A DNA stretch of 64,000 bases, from positions 7,254,001 through 7,318,000 of the forward strand of contig OU015569.1 in assembly GCA_907165135.1 (NCBI GenBank). The letters are read 5' to 3'. This stretch comes from Oikopleura dioica (Eukaryota; Animalia; Chordata). This document shows positions 3,196 to 6,155 of this stretch, in pieces. A model generated the notes under the pieces. That model was not told where the DNA came from, searched no databases, and saw only the letters and a program-made list of their open reading frames with translations. Every line of letters begins with the position of its first letter. Positions within the stretch are counted from its first letter, which is position 1. Both the position numbers and the translations under genes were made by a program.

Positions 3196-3626
3196 GATTA
3201 AGATAATTTAAGCATTTTATTTTGCTTTGAATTTATTTATTATTCACCCGGAAAGAATGGAAATACCGGGGCACAGTCGGACAGTTTCTTCGGACAGAAT
3301 GACGTTTCAGTAAAAAAAATTGCTACCAATCGGACAGAAGCCGAACAATCCAAGTCCATGAACGTCGAGGTAGGAGCATTTTCATGAAAGTGTTGCCTTG
3401 CGAATACCCGGCGGACATATAAACCTGCACATTTTTATAAATTCATCCTGCAAGTTCAAAAGTCCAGATTCAACATTAAATAAAAGGACTATTTATTCGA
3501 AAAAAAAAAAGAAGTTAGAATTTAAATATAGAAGTTAGTAATGTTTGTAGAAATATCCCTAGGTTTGAAAGAAAAGTCGTAATGTACGGTCAAAGATTAG
3601 CAGTGAGAGGCGTGTCGACTGTCGGA

Positions 3627-4348
3627 TCAACAAACTGTCATTATTCCGTCAATACTGTCAAGTAAAGGCTTCTTTATATTAGCGGAACTTTCCTTAGTAT
3701 GATCGCTCGTGCCGAAAATTATCTCCCCAAAAGCTTTTGCAGTGGGACTACAACCAATTGCTAGAGAGCATGGACGACACTAAAAATACTAAGTTTTTGC
3801 TCATCGTTGAATTCTTTCCACCTGAAGACAATTCCAGCAATCAGGTCGAGTCGGATTTTTAAGACACCCCAGGCAAAAAGTGCACTTGTTACAGTGAGCG
3901 AACTGATCGCAAGTCCCTTTCAGACAAGCTACACAAGTCATACATGAAAGACATCTTTTAACCTGATCAGAAAATCTGAGCTAAGAACGAGCCGAAATTC
4001 TCATGACCAGTTACTAGTGCATTCTTCGCAAGGCCCGGTCCAAGTGTTCAACATGTACTCAAGGGGTTGACAAAAGAGGCGTCCAAAGAGACTTTAATTA
4101 GTAAGTGATAATTTATTTGTATTTTAGCAACCCTTACAGCGAATATTTGAGACAGTCGACGCAATGATAGCAGTTTCCGCAGCGCTGGACGCATTCGCCG
4201 CAAATCGCTTCGTCTTCGTGGTGCTCGTCGATTGTTACGCCAGTTTCGTTGAGGAGCTCTGAAGGTGCTAGCAGAACCTCCTTAATTTATGTACAATCAA
4301 ACCTTCAGCGGCAAGGTGCAAAATTAAAAAGTGGATTAAAAATTCCAT
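3627..4348 (-). CDS. Cys-rich protein (~175 aa, 24 Cys) with four CxxCxxCxxC motifs; not in the ORF track
   Basis: Manual splicing gives ...AICGECVQRCGNCYHCVDCLKYSLLFGRLFCQPLEYMLNTWTGPCEECTNFSDQVKRCLSCMTCVACLKGTCDQFAHCNKCTFCLGCLKNPTRPDCWNCLQCRPCSLAIGC...TVC*. The 5' end is uncertain (ATG 4348, or an upstream ATG at 4482). Confidence 0.7.
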
Positions 4349-4672
4349 CTTTCTCTCTCTTGGCGGAAAGCGAAATCAGATATCTTAGAAATAAACTTTT
4401 TGGCGCTAACGGAAAATCCCGCAGATGTTCGCTTGAGTGTTATTTTGGTACATATTTTCGCTGAATTAACCATATAAGACATACTGTAGTTAACTATTTG
4501 TAGTAGTCATAACGATAAGCTACGTAACTAAATATGATATTTGTTGGAATTGCACCACGTCCTTCAGACGTTGTTTTGAAAGTGCACTCGTAAGGGTCTC
4601 ACGGTAAGATTGAAGTCTACCTATTTGTTAACTACGCCAGCTAAAACACACGGCTCAAGCTAACGCAACAAT

Positions 4673-5227
4673 TTATGCGTTAGTTTTGAGCCGTCTACCT
4701 GGTCTCTTCTGGTAAGGAATGTCGAATTCCTTCTTGAGATGAAGGATCCACGAGTGTGAGAACTCCAATCTGGCGATGTCGTCCCACTTCTTCCACTCGT
4801 CGAGATCAGCAGTTTTCCGGGCAATGTAAACCATGTCATCATTTGTCACCCTCTTCTTTGTCGCTTGCTCCTCCAGAATCAGCTCAGCAAGATGTGCTCG
4901 GAATCGCTGCATTCCAATCGTTTTGCCAATTCTTTCCTTTGGAGATTGCATATCCACGATTGCATCTTTATCCTTAATTAGCTTTCGGACTTGGTACCGT
5001 GTTACCGTGAGACCAAGTCTAGCCGAAACTAGTTCAACTAGCTTCCTACATCCTAAGTCCTTATTCTCTAGATGCAACTGAACAATCTCTTTCTTTTGCG
5101 AAACATTGAGCGGCCGCTTCCTCGCTTCTTCTAGAGCTTTTTTGTATTTCACCGTGAATGTCTCCGTCCATCTTCCAGGAGGGATTTTCATGCCCCATTC
5201 CCAATTCTTTTCGTACTCTGTCATCAT
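4673..5227 (-). CDS. Intronless CENP-B/pogo(Tigger)-type DNA-binding protein with two HTH domains and no DDE domain
   Basis: RKRPLNVSQKKEIVQLH...RKLVELV...YQVRKLIKDKDAI resembles the CENP-B N-terminal HTH. ...VTNDDMVYIARK...LEFSHSWILHLKKEFDI resembles the Tc5 HTH (FxxSxGWLxxFKKR). Confidence 0.7.
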   Translation of the reverse strand: MMTEYEKNWEWGMKIPPGRWTETFTVKYKKALEEARKRPLNVSQKKEIVQLHLENKDLGCRKLVELVSARLGLTVTRYQVRKLIKDKDAIVDMQSPKERIGKTIGMQRFRAHLAELILEEQATKKRVTNDDMVYIARKTADLDEWKKWDDIARLEFSHSWILHLKKEFDIPYQKRPGRRLKTNA

Positions 5228-5574
5228 TTTTGGTGGGCTTTGTTTGTAAGTTTACTGTTTTTTCTGCGGTTTTGCAGTGGACGGGGGTTTATATTCCCGC
5301 GATCCCCAGCTGTGCATTACCGGCTGGAACTTTCTCGCTTAGCGCCACCTTCCATATCCTAGTTTTCGTAAAGGTACCCTGCTGCGAGATTCTGACTAGT
5401 TATCAAGATCTGACTCTGACGGTGCATGCAGCATGCTATTTGGTCTAATAATCTTGGGTTGTAAACACATTGTCGAAAATTACCGATTCATGGCAGTTTT
5501 CTGATAGTTCTACAGTAGAACTCCTACTCGTATACATAATAATTTATTTTTGAACAGAAGATGAAATCAAGAGT

Positions 5575-5933
5575 TTACTCTTCGTCCTCTTTGTATAGTT
5601 CTGGAAGTTTGAGGCCAACCAAGTTTGCAGCTTCTTGAACAGAACGCTCTCCTTTTCCATGGTAGATTTTGATCAACTCTTGATGCTTCCTGGAATTTTC
5701 GAGCAAGCAGAGATAAGTCTCGGCGTCAACTACTGCTGCGCCAGGTTGTCGACAGTATCTGTTCTCTGAGATTTGGTTGACACTAAGAAACATTAATACT
5801 AAACTTATTCCATTTTTACTGACTCGAATAAATCTTGGGCGCGGTAGAATGCACTCCACTGTTCTTTGGGCCATCCCTTGTACAGCAGTCCGATTTCCCT
5901 CAACAACTTTCCCCTCACCGAATTCAAAGGCAT
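5575..5933 (-). CDS. FMC1: FMC1 (LYR-family, mitochondrial complex V assembly factor)
   Basis: TYLCLLENSRKHQELIKIYHGKGERSVQEAANLVGLKLP matches the FMC1 C-terminus. Exon 1 is MPLNSVRGKLLREIGLL, preceded by the acceptor ctccag|aATG. Confidence 0.9.
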
Positions 5934-6155
5934 TCTGGAGAAACAAAGATCAAAATTTGACGAAGTTGCCGTTATTATATTACTATATCAATGTGTAAGG
6001 AACGTGAAGAGAAAAAAAGCAATAAACGTATCCGTTGGGAGATATTGGAAAATCAGATATTCAGAAGGAAACATTTTGGGCAGGAATAATAGGAACGGAG
6101 AGTGCACACGATTTGAACTGTGCTTTGATAGTCTTTTGAAGGCACAAAATATAAC

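What the first reader, a model, noticed from the sequence alone, without database searches (positions are those of the whole stretch)
3627..4348. Hidden gene encoding four CxxCxxCxxC motifs (candidate new metal or Fe-S binding protein)
All exons are under 60 codons, so the ORF track misses this gene. Splicing gives one frame with 24 Cys, including CGNCYHCVDC, CLSCMTCVAC, CNKCTFCLGC and CWNCLQ|CRPC. The fourth motif is only completed across an intron, which supports the model. The acidic/His N-terminus (DEHHEDE) adds potential ligands. Aromatic and hydrophobic residues argue against a classical metallothionein. The spacing differs from ferredoxin CxxCxxCxxxC by one residue. No family was recognised; metal binding is inferred.
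Basis: partly seen in the sequence, partly recalled or inferred. Interest (0 to 1): 0.72.

Follow-up and report, generated by a model that had tools for sequence, protein, structure and literature searches.

The report
Orphan cysteine-rich secreted protein gene
This is a real, conserved five-exon gene of the tunicate Oikopleura dioica that is already in the public annotation as an uncharacterised protein; it encodes a small, probably secreted protein with four CxxCxxCxxC units and no known relatives, and there is no evidence yet that it binds metal.

Summary
The window is an exact piece of the Oikopleura dioica OKI2018_I69 assembly, chromosome XSR. The "hidden" gene on the minus strand (4348..3627) is already annotated as g15397 (167 aa, uncharacterised). 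Fragments of its Bergen ortholog are also deposited (CBY09064, CBY43082).

The cysteine motifs are real. They are the only three contiguous CxxCxxCxxC in all six frames of the 64 kb. A fourth is completed across a canonical 42-nt intron.

Okinawa and Bergen copies show strong purifying selection: pN 0.13, with pS about 0.78 (saturated). All 23 shared Cys are kept.

Its codons are as conserved as exons, so it is probably coding. Including it needs a non-canonical junction in this assembly.

No Pfam or NCBIfam family was found, and no relative outside O. dioica among 1.84 billion proteins. PDB hits are weak and non-significant, all to zinc fingers.

A conserved hydrophobic first exon and a conserved NET sequon point to the secretory pathway. 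The DEHHEDE stretch is not conserved.

Best reading: a lineage-restricted secreted protein whose cysteines form disulfides. Metal binding is a weaker rival. RNA runs gave no reads, which is no test. The scan had not noted this gene on other DNA.

The parts
4399..4429 (-). Upstream block conserved between Okinawa and Bergen (E-box CA[TC]CTG plus TTTTCCGTT), about 50-80 nt 5' of the ATG. Candidate promoter element.
   Evidence: Alignments. The upstream 92 nt is 65% identical, against 39-56% for introns 1, 3 and 4. A regulatory role is inferred.
4303..4348 (-). Exon 1 (46 nt, phase 1): MEFLIHFLILHLAAE+G, a hydrophobic signal-peptide-like N-terminus.
   Evidence: Bergen has the same length and phase (MIFLVNLLIIFLSAQ). 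Mean Kyte-Doolittle hydropathy of residues 3-12 is 2.3 (Okinawa) and 3.1 (Bergen). It is part of public model P0003.
4259..4302 (-). Intron 1, GT-AG, 44 nt.
   Evidence: The acceptor position matches Bergen. Identity to Bergen is 43%.
4138..4258 (-). Exon 2: conserved LLNETG (N-glycosylation sequon), a variable acidic linker (DEHHEDE, not conserved), then the 6-Cys module CGECVQRCGNCYHCVDCLKYS.
   Evidence: pN is 0.06 in the conserved parts. All 6 Cys are kept, two of them with TGC/TGT switches.
4092..4137 (-). Intron 2, GTAAG..AG, 46 nt, phase 2. Unusually conserved.
   Evidence: Identity to Bergen is 74%. Bergen haplotype 2 has GC..AG at the same positions. The Bergen reference and a metagenome contig have AA in place of the AG acceptor.
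4015..4091 (-). Exon 3: (L)LFGRLFCQPLEYMLNTWTGPCEECT, 3 Cys.
   Evidence: Bergen has FCQPLEYVLSTWTDVCNDCI with all 3 Cys kept.
3955..4014 (-). Intron 3 core. The public model removes 4014..3929 (GT-AG, 86 nt). The junction homologous to Bergen removes 4013..3955 (TA-AG, 59 nt; equivalently GT-AA).
   Evidence: The branch-point-like TTCTGA and the AG|ATGT acceptor are conserved with Bergen. Identity is otherwise 39%.
3929..3954 (-). It is intronic in the public model but probably coding.
   Evidence: It is 81% identical to Bergen, at least as high as the exons. The differences are mostly synonymous, and Bergen keeps RCLPCTTCVAC in its model P0001.
3822..3928 (-). Exon 4 (remainder): CLKGTCDQFAHCNKCTFCLGCLKNPTRPDCWNCLQ.
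   Evidence: Amino-acid identity is 80%, pN 0.10 and pS 0.81. HMMER found the Bergen ortholog at E = 4.6e-16.
3780..3821 (-). Intron 4, GT-AG, 42 nt, with in-frame stops. It splits the fourth motif CWNCLQ|CRPC.
   Evidence: The same junction is in P0001 and P0003.
3627..3779 (-). Exon 5: CRPCSLAIGCSPTAKAFGEIIFGTSDHTK (conserved), then an unconserved tail ending in C, and the stop TGA at 3629-3627.
   Evidence: The tail differs between lineages, and its frame is shifted by a T-run indel among Bergen haplotypes.
3492..3497 (-). AATAAA, a likely poly(A) signal about 130 nt after the stop.
   Evidence: Read from the sequence. Bergen has AATAAA about 100 nt after its stop. Function is inferred.

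Best explanation
**What is shown.** This is a five-exon protein-coding gene of Oikopleura dioica, under purifying selection. It lies on chromosome XSR next to IRE1 and is publicly annotated as g15397.

**The encoded protein.** It has about 167-176 aa with these parts, in order:
- a cleavable hydrophobic signal peptide;
- a conserved N-glycosylation sequon (NET);
- a variable acidic linker;
- a core of 23 conserved cysteines.

The core is built from four copies of the unit C-x2-C-x2-C-[VL]-x-C-L-K. The copies are CGNCYHCVDCLK, CLSCMTCVACLK, CNKCTFCLGCLK and CWNCLQCRPCSL. A CxxC (CEEC) continues the 3-residue period upstream of the second unit.

**What is inferred.** The protein enters the secretory pathway. 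Its cysteines form a dense disulfide network, within the chain and possibly between chains. It would act outside the cell as a compact structural, cross-linking or binding protein. The family is restricted to Oikopleura and evolves quickly outside the cysteine framework.

**Status of the claims.** The gene, its conservation and its motif architecture are shown. Secretion and disulfide bonding are inferred. The biological role is unknown.
For: **Identity and annotation**
- The window equals GCA_907165135.1 OU015569.1.
- The annotated product P0003 has the same span as the finding.
- Bergen orthologs P0001 and P0002 lie in conserved synteny after IRE1.
- A wild marine metagenome contig carries the same gene.

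**Selection**
- Over 137 aligned codons, pN is 0.126 and pS 0.78 (saturated).
- All 23 shared Cys are conserved, 9 of them with TGT/TGC switches.
- Exons are 65-81% identical to Bergen, against 39-56% for introns 1, 3 and 4.

**Repeat unit.** VQRCGNCYHCVDCLK and VKRCLSCMTCVACLK are 60% identical.

**Secretory signs**
- Exon 1 keeps its length, phase and hydrophobicity while its sequence changes.
- LLNETG is conserved with pN 0.06.

**Not a floppy thiolate protein.** It has 11 aromatic residues, and hydrophobic residues between the Cys are conserved.

**No known metal-binding family.** Pfam and NCBIfam gave none, even at E <= 10.
Against: - No transcript evidence was obtained. Four RNA runs with the species label gave 0-2 partial reads on the locus, and the tool says this is no test.
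- No signal-peptide predictor was available. The N-region has no K or R.
- The conserved Cys count is odd (23).
- The only weak similarities in the PDB are to zinc-binding domains: Pirh2 CTCHY at E 0.64, the CesA RING at E 0.05, and the KMT2B CXXC finger at E 2.4.
- CxxCxxC triads are classic metal ligand sets (general knowledge).
- AlphaFold models are uninformative, with pLDDT 37-38.
- Three of the four sampled copies carry a non-canonical base at a conserved splice position: OKI intron 3 at +1, and the Bergen reference and the metagenome contig at the intron 2 acceptor. The gene may therefore be dispensable, or spliced in unusual ways.
Confidence: 0.55

Rival explanations
1. It is a metal-thiolate protein. 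On this reading the CxxCxxCxxC units act as interleaved ligand sets: three Cys of one unit plus one Cys from another, as in CXXC zinc fingers or 2x[4Fe-4S] ferredoxins. They would bind Zn, Cd or Cu, either in the cytosol or inside the secretory pathway or house.
For: - The core is about 30% Cys with strictly conserved spacing.
- The conserved Cys count is odd (23), which does not matter for metal sites.
- All weak PDB matches are to zinc-binding modules.
- The segment C-x2-C..HC-x2-C-x2-C-x2-C..C-x2-C formally fits RING/CTCHY-like spacing (my reading).
- O. dioica is known to build modular Cys-repeat metal binders, OdiMT1 and OdiMT2 (PMC8283569).
Against: - All similarity E-values are non-significant, and no Pfam zinc-finger or Fer4 model matches even at E <= 10.
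- The conserved signal-like exon 1 and NET sequon place the protein in an oxidising compartment.
- The His/acidic stretch is not conserved.
- There are many aromatic and hydrophobic residues, and no CC or CxC motifs.
- The published survey counts only two metallothioneins in O. dioica, with a different 12C architecture.
Confidence: 0.25
2. It is an iron-sulfur protein with ferredoxin-like cluster binding.
For: There is one very weak match of exon 2 to a polyferredoxin-like subunit, FwdG, at E = 2.
Against: - The spacing does not match, and there is no Pro after the fourth Cys.
- No Fer4 Pfam hit.
- The N-terminus is signal-peptide-like.
- The family is restricted to one animal genus, whereas Fe-S folds are ancient and widespread.
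Confidence: 0.03
3. It is a gene in decay or a dispensable gene. On this reading the splice-site changes make many alleles non-productive, and the product has no important present function.
For: - OKI has T where Bergen has the G of the intron-3 donor.
- The Bergen reference and the metagenome contig have AA where Bergen haplotype 2 and OKI have the intron-2 AG acceptor.
- The C-terminal tail is frame-shifted among Bergen haplotypes.
- No RNA reads were found.
Against: - No stop or frameshift lies in the conserved coding part of any of the four copies.
- pN/pS is about 0.16 across lineages whose silent sites are saturated.
- In-frame rescue junctions exist for both variants: GT-AG 86 nt in OKI and GG-AG 50 nt in Bergen.
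- 11-12% of O. dioica introns are non-canonical anyway (PMC8008620).
Confidence: 0.07

Closest known systems
Oikopleura dioica metallothioneins OdiMT1/OdiMT2 (t-12C/12C repeat proteins; PMC8283569)
   Same: Same organism. Lineage-restricted, Cys-rich and built from repeated Cys modules, with variation between populations.
   Different: - The OdiMTs are 28-31% Cys, start with a 6-aa N-terminal peptide with no signal peptide, use a 12-Cys domain (C7+C5), and have demonstrated Zn/Cd binding.
- This protein is 15% Cys overall, has a hydrophobic N-terminal exon, 11 aromatic residues, a strict C-x2-C period and no CC.
- The HMMER search found no relative other than its own ortholog.
- Metal binding is untested.
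CXXC-type zinc finger (PF02008) and ferredoxin CxxCxxC triads
   Same: Runs of C-x2-C-x2-C, including CGxCxxC-like strings in exon 2 (CGEC..CGNCYHC).
   Different: There is no significant match: the KMT2B CXXC finger scores E = 2.4 and Pfam gives none. The fourth Cys comes after 2 residues, not after 3 or more. There is no nuclear or cytosolic context.
RING / Pirh2 CTCHY cross-brace zinc fingers
   Same: The segment C-x2-C ... H-C-x2-C-x2-C-x2-C ... C-x2-C gives weak alignments to Pirh2 (2dkt, E 0.64) and the CesA RING (1weo, E 0.05).
   Different: The matches are not significant. Extra Cys lie between the canonical ligands. No Pfam hit. The N-terminus is signal-peptide-like.
Cnidarian minicollagen cysteine-rich domains (CX3CX3CX3CX3CC) and other periodic-Cys secreted matrix proteins (recalled from general knowledge, not tested)
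   Same: Secreted proteins with short, strictly periodic Cys arrays whose disulfides can be reshuffled into cross-links. This is a possible analogy for how the protein works.
   Different: The period differs (3 residues against 4). There is no sequence relation and no collagen or proline-rich parts. This is an analogy only.
Oikosins (Oikopleura house proteins; PMC3390340)
   Same: Secreted Oikopleura proteins. 44% of them are orphans without known relatives.
   Different: Oikosins are defined by being isolated from house rudiments. 59 of 80 start with M(K/R)(I/L/F), whereas this protein starts with MEF or MIF. Neither its accession numbers nor its motifs occur in that paper's supplementary files.

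Membership tests
Metallothionein | Very high Cys share (about 20-30%) with CC, CxC and CxxC motifs | tested here: not met
   24 Cys in 158 counted residues, or 15% (about 30% in the core only). Only C-x2-C spacing occurs, with no CC or CxC.
Metallothionein | Few or no aromatic residues and few His | tested here: not met
   6 F, 2 W, 3 Y and 5 H.
Metallothionein | Cytosolic, with no signal peptide | tested here: not met
   A hydrophobic 15-residue first exon is conserved in both lineages. This was judged by inspection and hydropathy only; no predictor was run.
Metallothionein | Stoichiometric binding of Zn, Cd or Cu through thiolates | not testable with these tools
   Needs recombinant protein, then ICP-MS or ESI-MS.
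Oikopleura 12C metallothionein domain (OdiMT) | Sequence homology to the C7+C5 12-Cys domain | tested here: not met
   This is an indirect test. phmmer of exon 4 against 1.84 billion representatives, and a profile word search, found only the gene's own orthologs. OdiMT sequences were not aligned directly.
4Fe-4S ferredoxin (Fer4) | CxxCxxCxxxC(P) spacing and a Fer4 profile match | tested here: not met
   The spacing is CxxCxxCxxC with no Pro. No Pfam hit at E <= 10.
CXXC-type zinc finger (PF02008) | Profile match with two CGxCxxC clusters and a distal Cys | tested here: not met
   No Pfam hit. The PDB KMT2B CXXC finger scores E = 2.4.
RING / CTCHY zinc finger | Significant profile or sequence match to a cross-brace C4C4 or C3HC4 domain | tested here: inconclusive
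   The spacing is formally compatible, but E is only 0.64 (2dkt) and 0.05 (1weo). No Pfam hit. The models are too poor for fold comparison.
Oikosin (house protein) | Detected in the house proteome and expressed in the oikoplastic epithelium | not testable with these tools
   Accession numbers and motifs are absent from the supplements of PMC3390340. The N-terminus lacks the common M(K/R)(I/L/F) start.
Small secreted cysteine-rich protein (generic kind) | N-terminal signal peptide | tested here: inconclusive
   Exon 1 is hydrophobic and conserved, with A at -1 in both lineages (LAA|E and LSA|Q), but no K or R in the n-region. SignalP was not available.
Small secreted cysteine-rich protein (generic kind) | Conserved Cys framework with variable residues between | tested here: met
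   23 of 23 Cys are conserved at 66-80% overall amino-acid identity. The linker and tail are unconserved.
Small secreted cysteine-rich protein (generic kind) | Signs of passage through the secretory pathway (glycosylation, disulfides) | tested here: inconclusive
   One N-x-T sequon (NET) is conserved just after the hydrophobic exon. Glycosylation and disulfides themselves are not testable here.

The most novel reading that the evidence does not exclude
The period-3 cysteine array, (C-x-x) repeated up to six times in a row and CxxCxxCxxC four times, defines a new fold. It might be a 'cysteine ladder' in which helices or strands are zipped by rows of disulfides or by a chain of metal-thiolate sites. 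On this reading the fold arose de novo in the Oikopleura lineage and is used outside the cell, for example in the house or at the gamete surface, possibly as an extracellular metal binder.
Probability: 0.15. Interest if true: 0.6.

Novelty: new variant of a known kind. Interest (0 to 1): 0.35.

Why it matters
- **A clean example of a lineage-restricted protein.** It is a fast-evolving gene under clear purifying selection, with a Cys spacing (period 3, four CxxCxxCxxC units) that matches no curated family. That makes it a candidate new small fold.
- **Both public gene models look imperfect.** The Bergen model is split into fragments. The Okinawa model skips 9 conserved codons. The cause is splice sites that differ between haplotypes, so the locus is a useful test case for non-canonical splicing and annotation in Oikopleura.
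- **If it did bind metal,** it would be a third, unrelated Cys-repeat metal protein in an animal already used as a model for metallothionein modularity.
- **As things stand** it is an uncharacterised orphan, and nothing shown here would surprise a specialist greatly.

Tried and rejected
**RNA evidence.** I laid three oligo-dT RNA-seq runs and one single-cell run with the species label on 3450-4550 at 90% likeness. They gave 0-2 partial reads. The tool states this is no test unless the organism is shown in the run, and both read tools were then exhausted.

**Family scans.** Pfam on each exon and on P0001-P0003 at E <= 10, and NCBIfam, gave nothing.

**Protein searches**
- The word search with exon 4 found nothing.
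- A profile of three orthologs found only those orthologs.
- The ESM Atlas gave no usable hit, either by features or by its own model's structure (TM <= 0.36).

**Structure.** AlphaFold2 of P0001 with a shallow alignment, and of P0003 alone, gave pLDDT 37-38. I did not run fold search on them, because low-confidence models give meaningless matches.

**Literature**
- No paper mentions the accession numbers.
- 'CXXCXXCXXC' retrieves only unrelated work, such as RNA motifs and a Bacillus bacteriocin.
- The oikosin supplements do not contain it.

**DNA repeats.** There are no DNA-level tandem repeats, so the four protein units are old.

**Readings considered and rejected**
- A coding gene on the + strand: only short ORFs occur there, and the substitution pattern fits the minus-strand frame.
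- An operon with the upstream 184-aa ORF: the gap is 324 nt, and that ORF is absent in Bergen.

Only single exons by reference and the database proteins were used.

Full report
**1. What is at the coordinates**

The minus strand between 4348 and 3627 carries short coding pieces separated by very short introns. Three C-x2-C-x2-C-x2-C strings lie in one reading frame: CGNCYHCVDC, CLSCMTCVAC and CNKCTFCLGC. A fourth, CWNCLQ|CRPC, is completed when a 42-nt GT-AG intron (3821..3780) is removed; that intron contains in-frame stops.

These are the only three contiguous matches to the motif in all six frames of the 64-kb window. About 0.06 are expected from the Cys frequency, and 200 shuffles gave a mean of 0.1 and a maximum of 2. 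The first two units are also alike beyond their cysteines: VQRCGNCYHCVDCLK and VKRCLSCMTCVACLK share 9 of 15 residues.

**2. The gene is not hidden**

- A phmmer search of exon 4 against 1.84 billion representative proteins gave one hit (E = 4.6e-16). It is P0001 = CBY09064.1 / E4XBT9, an 'unnamed protein product' of Oikopleura dioica in the Bergen genome GCA_000209535.1.
- A word search with P0001 then found P0003, 'Oidioi.mRNA.OKI2018_I69.XSR.g15397.t1', 167 aa.
- The locus of P0003 (L002, GCA_907165135.1, OU015569.1, chromosome XSR) is an exact substring of the window. The annotated gene spans exactly 4348..3627.

So the window is the Okinawa O. dioica assembly, and the gene is in the public annotation as an uncharacterised protein. 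No paper mentions any of its accession numbers.

**3. Gene structure**

Comparison with the Bergen reference (L001), a second Bergen haplotype (L003) and a marine metagenome contig (L004, nearly identical to Bergen) gives the following:

| Part | Window coordinates | Notes |
|---|---|---|
| Exon 1 | 4348-4303 | |
| Intron 1 | 44 nt | GT-AG |
| Exon 2 | 4258-4138 | |
| Intron 2 | 46 nt | GTAAG-AG, phase 2 |
| Exon 3 | from 4091 | |
| Intron 3 | see below | |
| Exon 4 | to 3822 | |
| Intron 4 | 42 nt | |
| Exon 5 | 3779-3627 | includes the stop |
| AATAAA | 3497-3492 | |

Intron 3 is the weak point.
- Bergen joins ..CNDCI|RCLPCTTCVAC.. through a GC-AG intron of 60 nt.
- In the window the homologous acceptor (AAAAG|ATGT) and a branch-point-like TTCTGA are conserved. 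The first intron base, however, is T (4013) instead of G.
- The homologous junction would therefore be TA-AG, or read one base earlier, GT-AA.
- An enumeration of all G*-AG introns shows that none keeps both CEEC and CLSCMTCVAC in frame.
- The public model instead uses GT (4014) and a downstream AG (3929). This in-frame 86-nt intron deletes 9 codons and 3 Cys.

The 26 nt that the public model treats as intron are 81% identical to Bergen. Exons are 65-75% identical, and introns 1, 3 and 4 only 39-56%. The differences in those 26 nt are mostly synonymous. That stretch has therefore been coding for most of the time since the lineages split.

A similar oddity occurs in Bergen. The reference and the metagenome contig have AA where haplotype 2 and Okinawa have the AG acceptor of intron 2. 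A GG-AG intron of 50 nt would rescue the frame. About 11-12% of O. dioica introns are non-canonical (PMC8008620; PMC7072748).

**4. Is it a functional gene?**

- Over 137 ungapped codons between Okinawa and Bergen, pN is 0.126 while pS is 0.78, which is saturated.
- All 23 shared cysteines are conserved, nine of them with TGT/TGC switches.
- None of the four copies has a stop or frameshift in the conserved part.
- A block about 50-80 nt upstream of the ATG is also conserved. It contains CA[TC]CTG and TTTTCCGTT.
- The C-terminal tail is not conserved, and a T-run indel shifts its frame among Bergen haplotypes.

This is a real gene under purifying selection. Direct expression evidence is missing. 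Four RNA runs carrying the species label gave essentially no reads, and the tool itself says that is no test.

**5. What the protein looks like**

- **Exon 1** encodes MEFLIHFLILHLAAE in Okinawa and MIFLVNLLIIFLSAQ in Bergen. Length, phase and hydrophobicity are the same while the sequence changes. This is the usual behaviour of a signal peptide, with Ala at -1 in both.
- **LLNETG** follows directly. It is almost invariant (pN 0.06) and carries the only N-x-T sequon.
- **The acidic linker** comes next and is not conserved: VTIDEHHEDEAI in Okinawa, ITRAESDRQDDGAN in Bergen.
- **The core** has 23 conserved Cys.
  - CGEC-x3-CGNCYHCVDCLKYS
  - a linker with one Cys (FCQPLEY.L.TWT)
  - then C-x2-C six times in a row (CEEC-TR-CLSCMTCVAC in the homology model)
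  - LKGTC, x5, CNKCTFCLGC, LKNP-x4, CWNCLQCRPC, x5, C
- **Composition:** 15% Cys overall, with 11 aromatic residues and 5 His.
- There are no DNA-level tandem repeats.

**6. Comparison with what is known**

- Pfam and NCBIfam give no family at E <= 10, for single exons or for the annotated proteins.
- The profile search of 5.8 billion clustered proteins finds only the orthologs.
- The ESM Atlas gives nothing usable.
- Sequence searches of the PDB give only non-significant matches, all to zinc-binding modules: Pirh2 CTCHY at E 0.64, the CesA RING at E 0.05, the KMT2B CXXC finger at E 2.4, and TAZ, PHD and B-box domains at E > 3. These reflect shared C-x2-C spacing and are leads, not evidence of homology.
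- AlphaFold models have pLDDT 37-38, so no fold comparison was attempted.
- The known O. dioica metallothioneins have a different 12-Cys domain, 28-31% Cys and no signal peptide (PMC8283569).
- Oikosins are defined by proteomics of the house, and this protein is not in that paper's files.

**7. Interpretation**

The conserved signal-like exon and the sequon make the secretory pathway the most likely destination. There, a framework of 23-24 cysteines is expected to be oxidised. This expectation rests on established knowledge of secreted Cys-rich proteins and is an inference here. I therefore read the protein as a lineage-restricted, secreted, disulfide-rich protein built from four CxxCxxCxxC(LK) units (confidence about 0.55).

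| Reading | Confidence | Main points |
|---|---|---|
| Secreted, disulfide-rich protein | about 0.55 | signal-like exon, conserved sequon, conserved Cys framework |
| Fe-S binding | about 0.03 | spacing and distribution do not fit |
| Dispensable gene with segregating splice-defective alleles | about 0.07 | splice-site variants in three of four copies; contradicted by long-term purifying selection |

**8. Surroundings**

Upstream on the same strand lie three features:
- IRE1, with Pkinase and Ribonuc_2-5A domains.
- A 105-aa gene whose DNA is 77% identical to Bergen over 575 nt.
- A 184-aa ORF (4673-5227) that has no Pfam hit and no counterpart at the Bergen locus.

Downstream, a convergent gene on the + strand ends near 3313.

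**9. Limits**

I did not build, search or fold a joined model that includes the 9 extra codons. The scan's earlier notes hold nothing on this gene.

Noticed in passing
window 4673-5227 (-): An intron-less 184-aa ORF, annotated as a gene in OKI2018_I69, sits between IRE1 and the Cys-rich gene. It has no Pfam hit, no counterpart at the syntenic Bergen locus and no second copy in the window. It may be a lineage-specific insertion or a young gene.
   Followed up: partly
window ~5534-6106 (-); L001 3461-4022: This stretch is 76.7% nucleotide-identical between Okinawa and Bergen over 575 nt. That is far above intron and intergenic levels. It covers the OKI 105-aa gene (5575-5933), yet no gene is called there in the Bergen annotation.
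   Followed up: no
L001 ~5039-5040; L003; L004 (alignment A6, around columns 386-387): The Bergen reference and a wild metagenome contig carry AA where Bergen haplotype 2 and Okinawa carry the AG acceptor of intron 2. This is a segregating splice-site variant. A GG-AG intron of 50 nt could keep the frame.
   Followed up: partly
window 4092-4137 (-): Intron 2 is 74% identical between the two lineages, against 39-56% for the other three introns. Conserved strings include AAATACAAA and TCACTTAC. The reason is unknown; it could be splicing signals or intron retention, which in Okinawa would give an immediate stop after ..CLKYSL.
   Followed up: no
L001 ~5450-5460; L003; L004: A T-run length polymorphism (6 against 7 T) shifts the frame of the C-terminal tail among Bergen-type haplotypes. 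This explains why the deposited proteins are 101 aa and 124 aa long. The tail after ..FGT.D.TK is unconstrained.
   Followed up: partly
L004 (Ga0209092_10058140, 2372 nt): This JGI metagenome contig is Oikopleura dioica nuclear DNA of the Bergen (North Atlantic) type. It is almost identical to L001 across the whole gene.
   Followed up: partly
L001 4558-4983: The Bergen annotation has a 79-aa gene model that overlaps exons 1-2 of this gene and ends in another frame (TAG at 4981-4983). The true gene appears to be split into a spurious model and a 5'-truncated model.
   Followed up: partly
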